DNA of 63,457 bases, the filler included, from Octopus bimaculoides (taxonomy: Eukaryota), in NCBI RefSeq assembly GCF_001194135.2. It is 6 parts of 5 records of this genome, joined end to end, with 100 filler letters (N's around TTAATTAATTAA, not from the genome) between each part and the next. Parts side by side here need not be neighbours in the genome. Positions count along the whole stretch, not along the records: positions 1 to 20,443 come from NC_068985.1; 5 more parts are not named here. One strand, 5' to 3'. The notes under the pieces are model-generated. The model searched no databases. It saw nothing but the letters and a program-made list of their open reading frames with translations, and was not told where the DNA came from. How positions within the stretch are numbered: position 1 is the first letter of the stretch; the number at the start of each line of letters is the position of its first letter. This document shows positions 2,519 to 14,681 of this stretch, one piece after another. Both the position numbers and the translations under genes were made by a program.

Positions 2519-3954
2519 AAGCTGTATAGGTGTTTTTAGATTTGTTTTGAGCCAAGGTTTAGTCACTCTCTAGTGGTATTTGTAAGTGTTGGGAACAAAA
2601 TAATTTTGCATGATGAACCTAGTTTTACTGGCATTCAAGCTTTGACTAAGACATGTTCTTTTCTGGTATATGATACCCCAAATTACTCTATCCGTTTTAA
2701 GTTGGTAGTTTATTATTTAAAGAAGAGGTAGCTGCTGGCTGTAGCAAACAGAGAAGCCATGTAGAGGATTCTTTATTGGTCCAATGAATTTTAAGTTACA
2801 CACTTGACTATGACACTAATATTCTCCCAAATATCGTTAATGGGAATCTTGTATGCACTTAACATGTCTTGGTTTTCAAGTAACATAGATAATACAAGAT
2901 AGCATCAGAACTTAACTCCTTTTACATGCTAAACAACGCACATACCTCACCAAGCCAACTACAACTCTATATGACATCACCAACTCCACATGCCTGTAAT
3001 TTGCTTCCTACAATTAGTCCATGCTGTGGTCATAAGAAACAACTAAACCATCATCCTTATGTAATCCTATGCTGTGGGAGTGGGTCATTTTTTGTTTTGT
3101 TTTGAGGGCTTATAAAATATACAAGTTGTTTAATTCACAGACCTCAGCACCAACAAAGCTACCAATGTAAGTAATGACGGAGTGAATAATCAGTTTTGAA
3201 TGAATATACAGGCATGCATTCACTCACACACATTTGGTAATCTAAGCCTGAAAAAGATAGGTTTCTGTAAGAGGCCTGCAAAACTTGAAGTCACATGGAG
3301 CCGAATCAAACTATTTTAAATAATACATTTAACTCCGGTGTTGAGTGCATTTTTTTCATTTGTACACTCACTTGTATATATATTCATGCACATACATACA
3401 TATATTCAATAAATGTGGTTGAATTTAATTATAAATTTGAGGCTGAATCTTCAGTCTTCACTCCACTGTCATAATGTATAGGGTATTCAGAAAGTAATTG
3501 CATTTTTTCACCACTATGAAATATGAATCAACCAATCATGTCAGAGCCATGGTCAAATGGGTGGAACTGTCTAAAAATAGTATATCACCCTTTCTATCTG
3601 GTAGTGTGTCTTTCATAGTTATTTCAGTAATAAACTCCATGGAGGACAAGAACTTTATGAAACAACATATTCGCCATTGCTTACTGTATGAGTTTCAAAA
3701 GAAAAGTACTGTTTACAGAAGCAATGGAAAACATTTGTGAAGTGTATCCAGATGCAGTGAAAACTCATACATGTCAGCTGTGGTTTGATAAGTTTAAAGA
3801 TGTGATTGTGACACATCCAACAAGCCTTGCTCTGGAAGATAACCCACTCTGAATGACAACGTTTTGAATGAGACTATTGTATCAGATCCACATCAAAGCA
3901 GCAGATATTTGGCACAATAATTTAATGTGTCATGTTCAACTATCCATAGACATC

Positions 3955-4458
3955 ATCATCGTTTAATGTCTGCTTTCCATGCTAGCATGGGTTGGACAAT
4001 TTGACTGAGGACCGGCAAGCCAAAAGGCTGCACCAGGCTCTAATCTGATCTGGCAGAGTTTCTACAGCTGGATGCCCTTCCTAACGCCAACCACTCCGAG
4101 AATGTAGTGGGTGCTTTTATGTGCCACTGGCACGAGGGCCAGTCACATGGTAGTGGCAATGGCCTTGCTCAAAAGGTGTTTTTTACGTCCCACCTGCACG
4201 AGAGCCAGTCCAGCGGCACTGGCAACGACCTCGCTTGAATGATTTTCTAACGTTCCACCAGCACAAGTGCTAGAAGGCGGTGCTGGTAACGATTACGCTC
4301 AAATGGTGCTATTTACAGGCCACTAGCACGGAAGCCAGACAGCTGCTCTGGCAATGAACACACTCGGACAGTGCTGTTTGTGCTCCACTGGCACAGGTGC
4401 CAGTCAACGAGTATGGTTCAATTTCGATTTCGATTTCACTTGCTCCAACAGGTCTTCG
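3955..4458 (-). mobile_element. RTE LINE 3'-end copy (5'-truncated)
   Basis: (CAT)n tail followed by CGTTTAA...CCATGCTAGCATGG; homologous to the 3' UTR of the RT-bearing element at 31811-33704. Confidence 0.88.
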
Positions 4459-4806
4459 CATCTCAACCAAATTTGGGAAAACATGCAAAGAGGGAATTTG
4501 GGTTCCACAAGAGTTTACGCTTGAGAACTGAACACAATCTGCAGCAATCTTCTACCTAGGAATAACAACCTGTCATTTTTGCAGTGCACTGTTAGAGGTG
4601 ATGAAAAATGGGTTTTGCATCATAACAGAAAACAAAAACGACAATGGTTATCATGAACTGAGAGGCCAGTGCCAACACCAAAACTAGAACTCCATCCATA
4701 GAAATCCTTGCTCTGTGTTTGGTGGGACATGAATAGTATCATCCATTATGAGCTTTTGGAACATGGAAGAACCATCAATGCAGATGCCTATTGCCAACAA
4801 CTTGCT

Positions 4807-5145
4807 CATCATCATCATCGTTTAACGTCAGCCTTCCATGCTAGCATGGGTTGGATGATTTGACTGAGGACTGGTGAACCAGATGGCTACACCAGGTTCC
4901 AATCTGATTTGGCAGAGTTTCTACAGCTGGATGCCCTTCTTAACGCCAACCACTCTGAGAGTGTAGTGGGTGCTTTTACATGCCACCGGCACGAAGGCCA
5001 GTCAGGCGGTACTGGCAACGGCCACGCTCGAAATGGTGTATTTTACGTGCCACCTGCACAGGAGCATTGGCAATGACCTCGCTTGAATGTCTTTACACGT
5101 GCCACCGGCACAAGTGCCAGGAAGGCGACGCTGGGCACAGGTGCC
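4807..5145 (-). mobile_element. RTE LINE 3'-end copy
   Basis: Same tail and 3' UTR; CATCAT duplicated at both junctions inside the mariner ORF. Confidence 0.88.
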
Positions 5146-6423: not shown

Positions 6424-7611
6424 TTACTGTCTGTGTTCATTGATAAAATGTGAAGTGAAACTATAAACATCATGATAAATGTCACCACATAAATTGCATT
6501 GCCAAGGGTTCTCAGGGTCGTGAAGGCCCATATGCATCACATAAAGTGCATTGTCAAAATAAAGGATGTTACAATGTGGGCATGTAAAACTTCGGCTGTT
6601 GCCAATACATTTGTCTGAAACATTTGAACTAGAAACTGTTGCTGTAGAAGAATGAGAGCTCGTTTCAGCAATGGTACTTGTTACACCAATGTCTTTAATA
6701 AAAGGTGAAGTTCTTGAAGCTGGTGATTGACCACTTTCAAGGGATTGTGGAGGTGTTTGACGAATAGGGAGATGATCTTTTGAAAACAAACTCGATGGTT
6801 GCAGGGGAAAATAAGTAGAAGAAGATTTGGTCAGTCCTGGAACTGATATGTGATCTGAAGCTGTACTACTCTGAGGAGCAGCAGATACAAGAGATCTATT
6901 TGCTTGCTCCTGAAAATCAGAAACAGATTGTTTATTCAATGTTACATTGGAAAGATTCAACATGTTTGTATTAGGAAAGGGCTCTTGAACTGATAAACTT
7001 TCATCAATAATATAACAGTCATCTTCACTAGTCTCAGATTCCATTTTCACAGAAGAAACGTTTTTAGAATATTGGACAGATTCATTAGGATAACTTGTGT
7101 TTGTGGCAGTCAATCGAGATTCATGTTCATTAACTCCATACTGATTAGTTACAAATCGTAAAGAGGAATTATCAATTGATGGTTGGTTGGGGAGTGGTAT
7201 GAATCCAGATTGGAAAACTTTATGTTTGAAATGCATATGTTTTTTTAGATCATATTTTCTTTTTGCAGCATAATCACAAAGATCACAGATGAAGGGACGG
7301 GCATCGGAATGAACAACACAATGACTTACAATTTTACTACGGAATGGAGAAGAAAAAGAACAGCTCTCACAGTGAAATAACCTACGTTTCTCATCATCCA
7401 GTCCACCGACCGGGGTACTATTATTTCCTTTATCAATAGCTGCATCCTCACTTATATCGGACACATTTCCAAGAAATGTTTGTTGTTCGTTATGCACTTG
7501 ACTGAGATGATGTACCAAAGCTGAATGAAACTCTGTAGTGAATGAACACTGATCACACTGAAAATTCTTCTCAACATTTGAGTTTTCCATAGAATTAGCA
7601 GAATCGTTCAT
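6424..7611 (-). CDS. Ikaros/hunchback-family (Pegasus-like) C2H2 zinc-finger transcription factor
   Basis: Intact ORF with five C2H2 fingers: CDQC..HLSQVH, CESC..HCVVH, CDLC..HMHFKH, then a Ser-rich linker and the C-terminal pair CPHCNILYFDNALYVMHMGLH / WQCNLCG..FTSHFINEH typical of hunchback/Ikaros dimerisation fingers. First ATG at 7611; splice acceptor TTTCACAG places the exon start at 7659 with the frame open, so an N-terminal extension is possible. Confidence 0.92.
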   Translation of the reverse strand: MNDSANSMENSNVEKNFQCDQCSFTTEFHSALVHHLSQVHNEQQTFLGNVSDISEDAAIDKGNNSTPVGGLDDEKRRLFHCESCSFSSPFRSKIVSHCVVHSDARPFICDLCDYAAKRKYDLKKHMHFKHKVFQSGFIPLPNQPSIDNSSLRFVTNQYGVNEHESRLTATNTSYPNESVQYSKNVSSVKMESETSEDDCYIIDESLSVQEPFPNTNMLNLSNVTLNKQSVSDFQEQANRSLVSAAPQSSTASDHISVPGLTKSSSTYFPLQPSSLFSKDHLPIRQTPPQSLESGQSPASRTSPFIKDIGVTSTIAETSSHSSTATVSSSNVSDKCIGNSRSFTCPHCNILYFDNALYVMHMGLHDPENPWQCNLCGDIYHDVYSFTSHFINEHRQ

Positions 7612-8235
7612 GATGATAGAATCAACATAAGAAATGGATATCAAACTTGCTCCAGAGACCTGTGAAAATAGAATAACATAAAGATAAATAAATAAAACAA
7701 CAAAAATTCCGGTGAAAATATTTGAAAATAGTTTTAAAGATTTTGTTAATTTGATAAATATTTCTTTAAATGAAACTACTTATGATGGTAAGATACTGCT
7801 CTAATGATCAGAAAATCACAAGTTTTCAGATTATGAAATTATAATTAATGGAGGTATTGGAGATATAACTGGATGTACTTGATGGATAGAATCAACAGTT
7901 GACTTTTGGTACTTGATTGGAAAAGTTTCAAATACCATCTTGATGCTTTTAGGAAAGATATGAAAGATATTAAAATAATTGTCCCATTAACATAAATTTT
8001 GGGAGCTACTAATTAATCTGTTGAAGATGGAAGAAGTTTTTTCTCAAATAAATGCAGGCATCTATTTTGAAAAATGGAATAATGAAGTAATAGTAATATT
8101 TTATAGAATATCAAAACACACACACCCACAAAGATTTTAGCATAGTGAAAATGCAATTAACACTGTAACAGTTTTGCATAATTATTAGAAATGAACAAAA
8201 AAGGAAAAAGCTTTAACTAGAACATTGTCACTTAC

Positions 8236-8849: not shown

Positions 8850-9600
8850 CATCTTCATTATCGTATCCATTTAATGCCCATTTTCTATGGGTTCAATGGT
8901 CTGACAGGAGCAGGCAAGCTGGACGACTATGCCAAGCTCAATGTTTGCTTTGACATGCTCACTGTAGCTGGATGCCTGTCCTAACATCAATCATCATCAT
9001 CGTTTAACGTCCGCTTTCCATGCTAGCATGGGTTGGACGATTTGACTGAGGACTGGTGAAACCGGATGGCAACACCAGGCTCCAGTCTGATTTGGCAGAG
9101 TTTCTACAGCTGGATGCCCTTCCTAACGCCAACCACTCAGAGAGTGTAGTGGGTGCTTTTACGTGTCACCCGCACGAAAACGGCCATGCTCGAAATGGTG
9201 TCTTTTATGTGCCACCCGCACAAGCCAGTCCAGGGGCACTGGCAACGATCTCGCTCGAAAATCCTACGGGAGCCAGTCAGGCGGTACTGGCAACGGCCAC
9301 GCTCAAAATGGTGCATCTCATGTGCCACCCGCACAAGAGCCAGTCCAGGGGCACTGGCAACGATCTTACTTGGCTTGCCGGGTCTTCTCACGCACTTTAC
9401 AAAATCTACTGCATGCTTTTTACATGGCCCTAGCACCAGTTGAGGTCACCAAGTAACTTGCAAAATCCCTCAACTGAGGGTATGTAGTATTGAGGAAGGT
9501 GGCTTTATGTCAGGTGATGAGACAAAGTATCATAGAGAGACAGGAATGGGTGTTTTATTGTAGGGGAGATACATTATTGCCTCAGTTGGAAAAGACAGAT
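8850..9600 (-). mobile_element. Older diverged RTE-related 3' fragment, split by a younger copy
   Basis: Degenerate GCTGGATGCC..CCTAAC..ATCA at about 8985 resumes as CACTTTACA..TGCTTTTTACATGG after 9392. Confidence 0.55.
8991..9392 (-). mobile_element. RTE LINE 3'-end copy (young)
   Basis: (CAT)n tail, CCATGCTAGCATGG hairpin and GTGCCACCCGCAC internal repeats. Confidence 0.88.
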
Positions 9601-9715
9601 GATGATGAAAATGTGTCAGAGCATTATCTCACTTAGTTATTGTTCATTTTACATTTTTTTTTTTCATTTTATCTAGTTTCAGCTCATGAGCTGTAGCCAT
9701 GCTGGGGCACCGCCA

Positions 9716-10021
9716 TTTTTTTTTTTTTTTAGATTGGTGTTCAGTTGCATCGAACAGGCTGCCAGCCGATGACTATTCACAGGCGTGATCCCACTACTGC
9801 TCAACACGGAGTCTTTTGCCTGCTGCGTTTCCGCCCTGGGCCGGAGCGACCCTCCTTAGACAACCTGGTCCTGATGAGCTCCCTCTCCAGCACCATATTG
9901 ATGCCGAGCTTAGCGCGGACACCCAATCGCCATAGAAGACCGACTAGCAGAACTCCTATCCTCAAACCAGCCAACCAACCAAGACTCCGAGTAGCTGGAT
10001 TACAGGAGCACACCGCAACTC
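9716..10021 (-). pseudogene. RN7SL: Full-length 7SL (SRP) RNA retrocopy with poly(A) tail
   Basis: Minus strand matches conserved SRP RNA blocks CCTGTAATCCAGCTACTCGG, GGGTGTCCGCGCTAAGCTCGGCATCAATATGGTG, ACCAGGTTGTCTAAGGAGGG, CCCAGGGCGGAAACGCAGCAGG and CAGTAGTGGGATCACGCCTGTGAATAG. It is followed by A15 (9716-9730) rather than a T-run terminator. Confidence 0.9.
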
Positions 10022-10281
10022 AATATTTATCATCAATGACATACATTCCACCACAATATTTGTGGATAATATGTGTGATATTAATGTTGCAGTAATTTCT
10101 GTGTACATGTGTTTTGTATGTTTGTTTCAACTGAATAGGAGAGGATATTGTTTAGGATGTTGTTGTATTTTGGAATATTATAGATTTTAGGGTGGTTGTG
10201 AGTGCAGTGGATAAAAAAGTGTGAGATGTACCTTGCATTAAAAGGGGCTGTTCAGTAGAATTTTAGCATATATTTATAGCC

Positions 10282-10680
10282 CATCATCATCATCATCGTT
10301 TAAGGTCCACTTTCCATGCTAGCATGGGTTGGACGATTTGACTGAGGACTGGTGGACCAGATGGCTACACCAGGCTCCAATCTGATTTGGCAGAGTTTCT
10401 ACAGCTGGATGCCCTTCCTAATGCCAACCACTCTGAGAGTGTAATAGGTGCTTTTACGTGCCACCGGCATGAAGGCCAGTCAGGTGGTACTGGCAACAGC
10501 CACGCTCAAAATGGTGTATTTTACGTGCCACCTGCACAGGAGCCAGTCCAGCGGCACTGACAATGATCTCGCTCGAATGTCTTACACGTGTCACTGGCAC
10601 AAGTGCCAGGAAGGCGACGCTGGGCATAGGTGCCAAGACAGACTGGGTGGTTGGTAAGCAAGCTACTTACCACACAGCCA
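10282..10680 (-). mobile_element. RTE 3'-end copy fused to a tRNA-SINE head (chimera)
   Basis: Minus strand starts GGCTGTGTGGTAAGTAGCTTGCTTACCAACCAC (the SINE head also seen near 20810 and 30850), then joins the RTE 3' UTR and ends in (GAT)n. Confidence 0.75.
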
Positions 10681-11136: not shown

Positions 11137-11314
11137 TAAAAGCACCCACTACACTCTTGGAGTGGTTGGCGTTAGGAAGGGCATCCAGCTGTAGAAACTC
11201 TGCCAAATCAGATTGAAGCCTGGTGTGGCCATCTGGTTTCACCAGTCCTCAGTCAAATTGTCTAACCCATGCTAGCATGGAAAGTGGACGTTAAACGATG
11301 ATGATGATGATGAT
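11137..11314 (+). mobile_element. RTE LINE 3'-end copy
   Basis: Same 3' terminus on the plus strand, with GATTAA at both junctions; inverted relative to 10282-10460. Confidence 0.88.
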
Positions 11315-11423
11315 TAAGTTTCAGCCATGTTCTCTAAGTTCAGACTCACTCATTTTTATATACTTTTGTATGCATACATCTGGACCTGAAGATAAAGTCT
11401 AACTTCAAAATTGTCTGTCTTAC

Positions 11424-12119: not shown

Positions 12120-12404
12120 ATCATCATCATCATCGTTTAACGTCCACCTTCCATGCTAGCATGGGTTGGACGACTTGACTGAGGACTGGCGAACCAGATG
12201 GCAGCACCAGGCTCCAATCTGATCTGGCAGAGTTCCTACAGCTGGATACCCTTCCTAACGCCAACCACTCCGAGAGTGTAGTGGGTGCTTTTTATGTGCC
12301 ACAGGCACGAAGGCCAGTCAGGCGGTACTGGCAACGACCATGCTCAAAATGGTGTCTTTTACATGCCACCTGCACAGGAGCCAGTCCAGGAGCACTGGCA
12401 ATGA
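12120..12404 (-). mobile_element. RTE LINE 3'-end copy
   Basis: (CAT)n tail and the conserved 3' UTR. Confidence 0.88.
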
Positions 12405-12460
12405 CACACACACGCACACACACACACATATATATATATATACACACATGCCTTTATACA

Positions 12461-13864: not shown

Positions 13865-14161
13865 AGCGAAATCGTCATGGCACCTGTGCCCAGCATCGCT
13901 TTCCTGGCACTTGTGCCGGATGGCATGTGTAAAGACATTCGAGCGAGATCGTTGCCAGTGCTGCCGAACTGGCTCCTGTGCGGGTGGCACATAAAATACA
14001 CCATTTTGAGCATGGCTGTTGCCAGTACCGCCTGACTGGCCTTCGTGCCGGTGGCACGTAAAAGCACCCACTACACTCTCGGAGTGGTTGACATTAGGAA
14101 GGGCATCCAGCTGTAGAAACTCTGCCAAATCAGATTGAAGCCTGGTGTAGCCATCTAGTTT
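13865..14161 (+). mobile_element. RTE LINE 3'-UTR copy running into an N gap
   Basis: GTGCCGGTGGCACGTAAAAGCACCCACTACACTC...GGCATCCAGCTGTAG motif. Confidence 0.85.
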
Positions 14162-14681
14162 NNNNNNNNNNNNNNNNNNNNNNNNNNNNNNNNNNNNNNN
14201 NNNNNNNNNNNNNNNNNNNNNNNNNNNNNNNNNNNNNNNNNNNNNNNNNNNNNNNNNNNNNNNNNNNNNNNNNNNNNNNNNNNNNNNNNNNNNNNNNNNN
14301 NNNNNNNNNNNNNNNNNNNNNNNNNNNNNNNNNNNNNNNNNNNNNNNNNNNNNNNNNNNNNNNNNNNNNNNNNNNNNNNNNNNNNNNNNNNNNNNNNNNN
14401 NNNNNNNNNNNNNNNNNNNNNNNNNNNNNNNNNNNNNNNNNNNNNNNNNNNNNNNNNNNNNNNNNNNNNNNNNNNNNNNNNNNNNNNNNNNNNNNNNNNN
14501 NNNNNNNNNNNNNNNNNNNNNNNNNNNNNNNNNNNNNNNNNNNNNNNNNNNNNNNNNNNNNNNNNNNNNNNNNNNNNNNNNNNNNNNNNNNNNNNNNNNN
14601 NNNNNNNNNNNNNNNNNNNNNNNNNNNNNNNNNNNNNNNNNNNNNNNNNNNNNNNNNNNNNNNNNNNNNNNNNNNNNNNNN

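What the first reader, a model, noticed from the sequence alone, without database searches (positions are those of the whole stretch)
9716..10021. Full-length poly(A)-tailed 7SL retrocopy upstream of the ZNF coding exon, same strand, probably intronic
The SRP RNA identity is strong: the helix 6 GGAG loop and helix 8 GCG-GAAA-CGC with flanking CAGG/AGCAG are retained. An A-tail replaces the Pol III terminator, which indicates retroposition. 7SL-derived SINEs (Alu/B1) are classically associated with Euarchontoglires, so a cephalopod 7SL retro-family would be an independent Alu-like precursor. The A-tail points to L1/Tx1-type machinery, and a Tx1-like relic is present in the window.
Basis: partly seen in the sequence, partly recalled or inferred. 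Interest (0 to 1): 0.7.

Follow-up and report, generated by a model that had tools for sequence, protein, structure and literature searches.

The report
Octopus 7SL retrocopy fused to LINE tail
This is a dead, reverse-transcribed copy of the signal-recognition-particle RNA that entered the Octopus bimaculoides genome after its split from O. vulgaris, welded to the 3' end of a LINE retrotransposon; it is a nice one-off illustration of how SINEs are born, but there is no evidence here of an Alu-like family.

Summary
Window 10018..9731 (minus strand) is a near-full-length metazoan 7SL/SRP RNA sequence (Rfam RF00017, 220 bits, E 1.5e-59). It is followed by a pure A15 (9730..9716) where a Pol III T-run should be, and it lies about 2.1 kb upstream of, and on the same strand as, a single-exon Pegasus/Ikaros-like zinc-finger CDS.

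The orthologous O. vulgaris site is empty, so it is a lineage-specific retrocopy. After the A15 come 50 nt that are the 3' end of an octopus LINE (two hairpins), then its A-rich tail.

The 7SL part lacks its first 5-8 nt. It joins the flank at a GAG microhomology, and no target-site duplication is present.

Best reading: one target-primed reverse transcription event. A LINE with a structured 3' end started on its own tail, then switched template to an oligoadenylated 7SL RNA. That makes it a chimeric retrocopy.

This does not point to L1/Tx1 poly(A) machinery. No Tx1 relic was found among the nine long reading frames screened in this piece. No second copy turned up in the small amount of octopod sequence I could reach, so a SINE family is unproven, about 15% likely. 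7SL SINEs outside Euarchontoglires are already known from hagfish.

The parts
9731..10018 (-). 7SL (SRP) RNA-derived segment, 288 nt, Alu and S domains both present. It begins at about Rfam model position 9 (TTGCGGTG...) and ends ...CACCAATCT.
   Evidence: Rfam RF00017, 220.3 bits. The 5' boundary comes from the O. vulgaris empty site. CpG o/e is 0.70 against 0.37 in the flanks.
10019..10021 (-). GAG at the 5' junction. It is present in the O. vulgaris empty site and also matches 7SL positions 6-8 (GGGAGUUG in a bivalve 7SL), so it is a 3-nt microhomology at the 5' join.
9716..9730 (-). Uninterrupted A15 directly after the 7SL 3' end, standing where the Pol III T-run terminator would be. It is internal to the inserted block.
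   Evidence: A genuine mollusc gene ends ...GAUUCUUU.
9666..9715 (-). Last 50 nt of a LINE 3' UTR: hairpin 1 (9715-9694), hairpin 2 CAGCTC-AT-GAGCTG (9693-9680), then AAACTAGATAAAAT.
   Evidence: 94.5% identity over 55 nt to L001 15776-15722, which directly follows an ORF I take to be a LINE ORF2 C-terminus and its stop. The two-hairpin fold is the same in three tails. Three of five pairs in hairpin 2 show compensatory changes.
9646..9665 (-). A-rich terminal tail of the LINE part (G A11 TGTAAAAT). This is the 3' terminus of the insertion. Positions 9645-9639 (GAACAAT) are ambiguous between tail and mutated target.
   Evidence: The L001 LINE copy ends in (AAAAT/AAAT)n at the same place. The flank alignment to O. 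vulgaris resumes at 9638.
9393..9638 (-). 3' flank, collinear with O. vulgaris L001 5522-5276 at 93.5% identity.
10019..10117 (-). 5' flank, collinear with O. vulgaris L001 5268-5170 at 91.9% identity. Only 7 nt (GAACTGG) lie between the two flanks in O. vulgaris.
6424..7611 (-). Context: single-exon CDS of a Pegasus/Ikaros-like C2H2 zinc-finger protein (395 aa), 2.03 kb downstream of the insertion on the same strand.
   Evidence: P0073 is an exact substring of the window ORF. The ORF is 97% identical to the O. vulgaris protein named Pegasus-like. Pfam finds zinc fingers.

Best explanation
The block is a lineage-specific chimeric retrocopy made in one target-primed reverse transcription event.

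Proposed steps (inferred):
1. A LINE whose RNA ends in two hairpins plus an A-rich tail was nicked into this site and began cDNA synthesis on its own 3' end. The same 3' module is carried by tRNA-derived SINEs in octopus, which marks it as a 'stringent-type' tail.
2. After copying about 70 nt, exactly to the base of the first hairpin, the reverse transcriptase jumped to the 3' end of an oligoadenylated 7SL RNA.
3. It copied the A-run and nearly the whole 7SL RNA.
4. The cDNA end was joined to the upstream DNA at a 3-nt GAG microhomology, losing the first 5-8 nt of 7SL and making no target-site duplication.

Shown directly: the product (7SL, A15, LINE tail) is present in O. bimaculoides and absent from the orthologous O. 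vulgaris site, so it is younger than that split.

I take it to be non-functional: a pseudogene with no terminator, a truncated 5' end and many broken helices. The order of events and the single-event origin are inferred.
For: - Identity of the 7SL part.
- Empty orthologous site. There is no SRP hit in the O. vulgaris or Argonauta loci. Collinear flanks (window 9393-9638 with L001 5522-5276, window 10019-10117 with L001 5268-5170) leave 380 nt in the window against 7 nt in O. vulgaris.
- The stretch after A15 is a LINE 3' end. It is 94.5% identical to the sequence that directly follows a LINE-type ORF2 C-terminus and stop codon in L001. The same module ends tRNA-headed SINE copies.
- The module folds as two hairpins in all three versions tested, with compensatory changes in hairpin 2.
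- Both parts are in the same orientation, and both are absent from the empty site.
- The 7SL+A15 part has no TSD of its own, and the sequence at its 3' side (TGGCGG) is not an A/T-rich L1-type target.
- Pseudogene state: 220 bits and about 14 non-canonical pairs, against 270 bits and about 5 for a genuine mollusc gene that ends in UUU.
- Relative youth: pure A15, and CpG o/e 0.70 against 0.37 in the flanks.
- Literature: template-switch chimeras of LINEs with small RNAs, including 7SL, are documented in primates (bioRxiv 10.1101/2025.02.02.635956) and in Magnaporthe (PMC2104539). Stringent recognition of structured LINE 3' ends is reviewed in PMC3747384. Mono- and oligoadenylation of human small non-coding RNAs, with monoadenylation shown for 7SL, is reported in PMC12811392.
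Against: - There is no TSD bracketing the whole block, so the usual proof of a single event is missing.
- Only one outgroup gives a clean empty site. The O. sinensis locus is rearranged there and Argonauta is not alignable.
- The LINE's clade could not be identified (one search found nothing; one search gave no Pfam hit). 'Stringent-type' therefore rests on the shared SINE/LINE tail and its fold, not on an assay.
- An A15 on 7SL RNA is longer than the stable single A described in human cells.
- A master copy with the same architecture elsewhere in the genome would produce an identical insertion.
Confidence: 0.6

Rival explanations
1. Two independent insertions at the same nucleotide. First came a severely 5'-truncated LINE copy of about 70 nt. 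Later a poly(A)-tailed 7SL retrocopy landed exactly at its 5' edge, made by a poly(A)-recognising (L1/Tx1-type) element.
For: There is no shared TSD to tie the two parts together. L1-Tx1 elements are listed among recently active O. vulgaris LINEs (PMC13282606). The A15 is what a relaxed, poly(A)-dependent machinery would use.
Against: It needs two post-speciation hits at one position, since both parts are absent from O. vulgaris. The 7SL+A15 unit has no TSD of its own. Its would-be target (GAG|TGGCGG) is not T/A-rich as expected for priming on poly(A).
Confidence: 0.15
2. It is one copy of a 7SL-headed SINE family (7SL head, A-rich linker, LINE 3' tail). The family would be transcribed by Pol III from a master copy and mobilised by the LINE through the shared tail. 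That would be an independent, protostome SINE1 lineage.
For: The architecture is that of a SINE: a Pol III-type head plus what I infer to be the recognition module of the partner LINE, which demonstrably carries tRNA-SINEs. A Pol III transcript would read through A15 and the tail to the first T4 at 9611. The LINE part starts exactly at the base of the hairpin module.
Against: - No second copy was found. The antisense-ORF protein search returned only the window's own ORF, one 83% relative of unknown origin and distant mollusc genes.
- There is no further 7SL-like stretch in about 106 kb of octopod DNA held.
- The metagenome scan gave only chance hits.
- A curated O. vulgaris repeat annotation lists tRNA, 5S and U SINEs but no 7SL class.
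- The S domain is retained, whereas every accepted SINE1 has lost it. Kojima uses that deletion to tell a SINE from a chimeric retrocopy (PMC7245038).
- The copy is 5'-truncated.
Confidence: 0.15
3. It is a functional 7SL RNA gene.
For: A high Rfam score and intact helix 6 and helix 8 motifs.
Against: A15 stands in place of the T-run. The first 5-8 nt are missing. It has about 14 broken pairs. It is absent from the orthologous O. vulgaris locus.
Confidence: 0.01

Closest known systems
LINE-mediated chimeric retrocopies: U6/L1, and 7SL, 7SK, Y RNA and tRNA/L1 chimeras in primates (10.1101/2025.02.02.635956); MGL/WEIRD chimeras in Magnaporthe (PMC2104539)
   Same: The 3' part is a 5'-truncated LINE 3' end. 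The 5' part is a near-full-length abundant small RNA. Both are in the same orientation, and the explanation is RT template switching during TPRT.
   Different: Here the LINE part is only the structured 3' module of a non-mammalian LINE that shares its tail with SINEs, not mammalian L1. An A15 sits between the parts. No TSD is present. The host is a cephalopod.
Full-length 7SL retrocopies with poly(A): human 7SL pseudogenes, P7SL_Cpo (guinea pig), P7SL_MD (marsupials), as discussed in PMC7245038
   Same: A near-complete 7SL sequence, S domain included, followed by an A-run instead of the terminator.
   Different: Those end in the poly(A) and are attributed to L1. This one continues into a LINE tail and lacks a TSD.
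SINE1-1_EBu, the hagfish 7SL-derived SINE mobilised by RTE (PMC7245038)
   Same: 7SL-derived 5' part joined to a LINE-derived 3' part, in a genome where L1 is not the obvious driver. Its birth is ascribed to chimera formation.
   Different: The hagfish element is a proven multi-copy family with an internal deletion of the S domain and a uniform five-part structure. Here there is a single copy with the S domain intact.
Alu / B1 (Euarchontoglires SINE1)
   Same: 7SL ancestry and an A-run.
   Different: Alu and B1 lack the S domain, end in poly(A), use L1 and have TSDs. None of that applies here.
De novo SINE birth from a small-RNA head plus a CR1 tail (TguSINE1 in passerines, PMC5729268)
   Same: A small-RNA head fused to the hairpin-plus-repeat 3' end of a stringent LINE. 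It is the proposed first step of SINE genesis.
   Different: That is a tRNA head and an established family.

Membership tests
Metazoan SRP RNA (Rfam RF00017), by homology | Sequence and structure match above the gathering score across the Alu and S domains | tested here: met
   220.3 bits against a gathering score of 70, model 1-299.
Functional 7SL gene | Pol III T-run terminator directly after the 3' end | tested here: not met
   A15 follows ...CAAUCU, and the first T4 is 120 nt downstream. The Potamilus gene ends UUCUUU.
Functional 7SL gene | Complete 5' end and intact helices | tested here: not met
   The first 5-8 nt are replaced by flank shared with O. vulgaris. It has about 14 non-canonical pairs against about 5 in a genuine gene.
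Functional 7SL gene | Conserved at the orthologous position in a close relative | tested here: not met
   Empty site in O. vulgaris.
Retrocopy / processed pseudogene | Precise absence from an orthologous site, with flanks collinear | tested here: met
   Window 9638/10019 correspond to L001 5276/5268.
Retrocopy / processed pseudogene | A-run at the 3' end of the RNA-derived sequence | tested here: met
   A15 at 9730..9716.
Retrocopy / processed pseudogene | Target-site duplication | tested here: not met
   No repeat of 6 nt or more adjoins both junctions. The result is compatible with no duplication or a 7-nt target deletion.
L1/Tx1-type (poly(A)-primed) insertion | Poly(A) is the 3' terminus of the insertion, the target is T/A-rich, and the TSD is 7-20 nt | tested here: not met
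   The A15 is internal and the terminus is a LINE tail. The target is ...TTGAG^GAACTGG. There is no TSD.
LINE template-switch chimeric retrocopy | The 3' part is the 3' end of a LINE, the 5' part is an unrelated cellular RNA, and both have the same orientation | tested here: met
LINE template-switch chimeric retrocopy | Both parts inserted as one unit (single TSD pair, or both absent from the empty site) | tested here: inconclusive
   Both are absent from O. vulgaris, but there is no TSD to prove one event.
SINE1 (7SL-derived SINE) | Many dispersed copies with one uniform structure | tested here: inconclusive
   No other copy was found in about 106 kb of octopod DNA, among ORF-derived proteins or in metagenomes. 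The O. bimaculoides genome itself could not be searched by DNA.
SINE1 (7SL-derived SINE) | Internal deletion of the S domain, shared by all accepted SINE1 and used to separate SINEs from retrocopies (PMC7245038) | tested here: not met
   The S domain, with helices 6 and 8, is fully present.
SINE1 (7SL-derived SINE) | 3' tail shared with a partner LINE, or poly(A) | tested here: met
SINE1 (7SL-derived SINE) | Pol III transcription of at least one copy | not testable with these tools
   This needs small-RNA or Pol III occupancy data.

The most novel reading that the evidence does not exclude
The copy belongs to, or is the founder of, a 7SL-headed SINE family in octopods: full 7SL or a derivative, an A-linker, and the double-hairpin LINE tail that already carries tRNA SINEs. 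That would be the first SINE1 lineage in a protostome and the third independent origin after Euarchontoglires and hagfish. It would be caught at a stage before loss of the S domain.
Probability: 0.15. Interest if true: 0.7.

Novelty: new member of a known kind. Interest (0 to 1): 0.35.

Why it matters
SINEs are thought to arise when a LINE reverse transcriptase, having started on its own 3' end, jumps onto a Pol III RNA. Clear single-locus intermediates of that process are rarely shown outside mammals. This locus shows one, with base-level junctions and an empty ancestral site. It sits in a genome where SINEs make up about a tenth of the DNA.

It also shows how a LINE that appears to need its own structured tail can still copy a cellular RNA. 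If genome-wide searching finds more copies with the same junction, it would be a new, independent 7SL SINE lineage. If not, it is an ordinary, if instructive, chimeric pseudogene with no expected effect beyond adding 373-380 nt upstream of a zinc-finger gene.

Tried and rejected
- Translating the antisense 7SL ORF (9745-10095) and searching 5.8 billion proteins for sister copies. It found only the window's own ORF, one 83% relative (P0006, MetaClust only, not retrievable as DNA) and mollusc or shark 7SL genes at 55-69%.
- A metagenome scan for the 7SL-3'-end/A-run junction gave 3 hits, all chance matches of 20-28 nt.
- The O. sinensis and Argonauta orthologous loci were tried as extra outgroups. 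The site is not alignable in either.
- A search with the LINE C-terminal peptide to name the LINE clade found no candidates. Pfam on that peptide found nothing.
- Rfam at a permissive E-value on the tail gave only noise.
- A search for a TSD found none.
- 'Functional gene' was considered and rejected (no terminator, empty site).
- 'L1/Tx1 poly(A) retrocopy' was considered and rejected because the A-run is internal.

Full report
**1. The observation**

cmscan of the piece (1-20443) against Rfam 15 gives a single hit above gathering score. It is Metazoa_SRP (RF00017), window 10024..9729 on the minus strand, 220.3 bits, E 1.5e-59, model positions 1-299.
- The helix 6 GGAG loop is present, and the helix 8 stretch CCAGGGCGGAAACGCAGCAGGC matches the consensus exactly.
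- Read on the minus strand, the RNA ends ...CACCAATCT and is followed by fifteen uninterrupted A's (9730..9716).
- The nearest T4 on that strand is 120 nt downstream, at 9611.
- A 406-codon ORF at 7644..6424 on the minus strand is a C2H2 zinc-finger protein. It is 97% identical to an O. vulgaris protein named Pegasus-like.
- The database protein P0073 (395 aa) is an exact substring of that ORF, which puts the CDS at 7611..6424.
- P0073 maps to assembly GCA_001194135.2, record CM046605.1. From memory this is Octopus bimaculoides.

**2. It is a retrocopy, shown by an empty site**

The orthologous O. vulgaris locus (L001, OX597818.1) and the Argonauta hians locus (L002) contain no SRP hit.
- blastn of the window against L001 gives a collinear chain. 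Window 9393-9638 pairs with L001 5522-5276 (93.5%), and window 10019-10117 pairs with L001 5268-5170 (91.9%).
- Between these anchors O. vulgaris has 7 nt (GAACTGG), while the window has 380 nt.
- The insertion is therefore younger than the split of the two species. That split is given as 13.3-33.5 My in PMC13282606.
- The pure A15 and a CpG o/e of 0.70, against 0.37 in the flanks, fit a fairly recent event.
- As a yardstick, a genuine bivalve 7SL gene (Potamilus, L009) scores 269.8 bits with about 5 non-canonical pairs and ends ...GAUUCUUU. The window copy has about 14 non-canonical pairs.
- Part of that difference may be lineage divergence. No cephalopod 7SL gene was available for comparison.

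**3.

The 5' flank shared with O. vulgaris runs up to ...ATAAATATTGAG (window 10019), and the insert starts TTGCGGTG at 10018.
- Rfam model positions 1-8 are therefore aligned to flank. The copy lacks its first 5-8 nt.
- The uncertainty comes from GAG, which is both flank and what a mollusc 7SL has at that place (GGGAGUUG in Potamilus). It is a 3-nt microhomology.

Downstream of the A15 the insert continues: TGGCGGTGCCCCAGCATGGCTACAGCTCATGAGCTGAAACTAGATAAAAT, then G-A11-TGTAAAAT (9715..9646).
- The first 55 nt of this piece are 94.5% identical to L001 15776-15722.
- In O. vulgaris that stretch directly follows the stop codon of an ORF fragment ending ...GPQLFNIPPKDLRDL..VDVFKIKLDLFLSGVPDEQ... 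and runs into an (AAAAT/AAAT)n tail.
- I read that ORF as a LINE ORF2 C-terminus. The motif is familiar to me from CR1-group elements of marine invertebrates, but this is a recollection, not a test. Pfam has no model that hits it, and the protein search found nothing.

The same 3' module ends tRNA-headed SINE copies.
- In the form GGCGGTGCTCCAGCATGGCC.CAGTCAAATGACTGAAACAAGTAAAAGAG, it terminates SINE copies in the O. vulgaris and O. sinensis loci.
- One of these is an O. vulgaris-specific insertion that abuts the 99-nt 5' flank block, ending about 100 nt from the empty site.
- All three versions tested fold into the same two adjacent hairpins.
- In a 10-sequence alignment, three of the five pairs of hairpin 2 change on both sides. 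That is modest but consistent evidence for a conserved structure.
- A LINE and SINEs sharing a structured 3' end is the signature of 'stringent' 3'-end recognition (PMC3747384).

**4. Mechanism**

The block reads, 5' to 3': near-full-length 7SL, A15, the last 50 nt of a LINE 3' UTR, then the LINE's own A-rich tail.

In target-primed reverse transcription the cDNA starts at the 3' end of the template. The simplest history is as follows.
- The LINE's RT initiated on LINE RNA and copied the tail and both hairpins.
- It then switched to the 3' end of a 7SL RNA bearing an oligo(A) tail and copied it almost to its 5' end.
- The 5' junction was sealed at a GAG microhomology.

Supporting points:
- There is no TSD. 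Nothing of 6 nt or more adjoins both junctions.
- The target (...TTGAG^GAACTGG...) is not the TT/AAAA type.
- Template-switch chimeras between LINEs and small RNAs, 7SL among them, are documented for primate L1 (10.1101/2025.02.02.635956) and for a fungal LINE (PMC2104539).
- Post-transcriptional mono- and oligoadenylation of small non-coding RNAs is documented in human cells, with stable monoadenylation shown for 7SL (PMC12811392). An A15 is longer than that stable single A, so the source was presumably a minor, oligoadenylated species. This is inference.
- The reading also explains why a LINE that seems to need its own tail could copy 7SL at all: the tail was its entry ticket.

**5. Rivals**

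(a) Two sequential insertions at one nucleotide.
- This cannot be excluded without a TSD.
- It needs two post-speciation hits at the same position.
- The 7SL+A15 unit has neither its own TSD nor an A/T-rich target.

(b) A member of a 7SL-headed SINE family.
- The architecture is exactly SINE-like, and a Pol III transcript would run through A15 and the tail to the T4 at 9611.
- I found no second copy. The antisense-ORF protein trick returned only the window's own ORF, one 83% relative of unknown source and distant 7SL genes.
- About 106 kb of octopod DNA in hand has no further 7SL-like stretch.
- A metagenome scan gave only chance hits.
- A curated O. vulgaris repeat annotation lists tRNA-, 5S- and U-type SINEs but no 7SL class.
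- The S domain is intact, whereas its deletion is what Kojima uses to separate a true SINE1 from a chimeric retrocopy (PMC7245038).
- These are weak negatives, because the O. bimaculoides genome could not be searched by DNA. I leave about 15% for this reading.

(c) A functional gene. This is refuted by the missing terminator, the truncated 5' end and the empty site.

**6.

- 'L1/Tx1-type machinery' is not supported, because the A-run is internal and the terminus is a LINE tail of another kind.
- Of the 42 stop-free frames of 70 aa or more in the piece, I scanned nine against Pfam. None hit an RT or endonuclease domain, and Mos1 HTH_48 at 3498-3737 was the only transposon-related match. This was a partial screen, and a relic broken by stop codons could be missed.
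- 'Probably intronic' cannot be decided. The CDS is a single exon in O. vulgaris, O. sinensis and here. The copy therefore lies either in a 5'-UTR intron or upstream of the gene.
- 7SL SINEs are no longer exclusive to Euarchontoglires (PMC7245038).

**7. Verdict**

This is a real, well-delimited, lineage-specific 7SL retrocopy fused to a LINE 3' end. It is a new example, in a cephalopod and with a non-L1 partner, of a known kind of event. It is interesting mainly as a snapshot of the first step of SINE birth. Interest is 0.35. It would rise to about 0.7 if a genome-wide search finds a family.

Noticed in passing
window 9745-10095 (+); proteins P0005, P0012, P0017, P0019, P0029, P0031: The antisense strand of 7SL is an open frame of more than 100 codons in many animals. 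Public proteomes hold 'proteins' that are antisense translations of 7SL genes. Examples are 'proteasome endopeptidase complex' in Elysia marginata and Plakobranchus ocellatus, and hypothetical proteins in Potamilus, Elysia crispata and a shark. For P0012 I confirmed that the gene model lies on a genuine 7SL gene (L009 2258..1961). These look like annotation artefacts.
   Followed up: partly
window 3951-4288, 4806-5117, 8985-9366, 10282-10606, 11137-11315, 12120-12405, 13907-14161: Seven or more copies of an abundant octopus repeat that ends ...GTCCAACCCATGCTAGCATGGAAAGCGGACGTTAAACGATGATGATGA, a (GAT)n tail when read on the minus strand for most copies. Two copies bracket the 7SL insertion within about 270 nt. 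Its tail differs from the one fused to 7SL.
   Followed up: partly
L001 4753-5169 (O. vulgaris), abutting the 99-nt 5' flank block of the empty site: An O. vulgaris-specific insertion of a tRNA-headed SINE (box A/B-like GGCTGTGTGGT...GGTTCCGGGTTCAGTCCC). It ends in the same double-hairpin module plus (AGTAAAAG)n. So this small region took independent retroposon hits in both lineages after they split.
   Followed up: partly
window 3498-3737 (+); L001 13871-14083: A Mos1/mariner HTH_48 relic (Pfam E 4e-5, right at the gathering score) downstream of the ZNF gene, conserved in position in O. vulgaris. A second mariner-like fragment (...LPHLLYSPGLAPSAFHLF...) at 1607-1825 had no Pfam hit.
   Followed up: partly
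window 14162-14681: An assembly gap (520 N) flanked by (TA/AT)n and repeat copies. ORFs listed across it are artefacts.
   Followed up: no
window 9716-9732 (+): On the + strand the A-tail reads T15 followed by AG, which is a polypyrimidine tract plus AG like the cryptic acceptors of antisense Alu. It is on the strand opposite to the ZNF gene, so it is probably irrelevant here.
   Followed up: no
L006 6600-6900 (O. sinensis): At the position corresponding to the insertion site, the O. sinensis assembly carries a different tRNA-like SINE (GGCCCAGTGGTTAGGGCAGCGGACTTGCGG...) and lacks the flanking sequence seen in O. vulgaris. This is a lineage-specific rearrangement or an assembly difference.
   Followed up: no
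L002 14414-14479 (Argonauta hians): A tRNA-like hit (RF00005, 40.9 bits) 3 kb downstream of the ZNF orthologue. An element with a related tail (AGCGTTGCCCCAGCATGGCC...) begins about 140 nt beyond it, which suggests a tRNA-derived SINE with the same tail type in a distant octopod.
   Followed up: no
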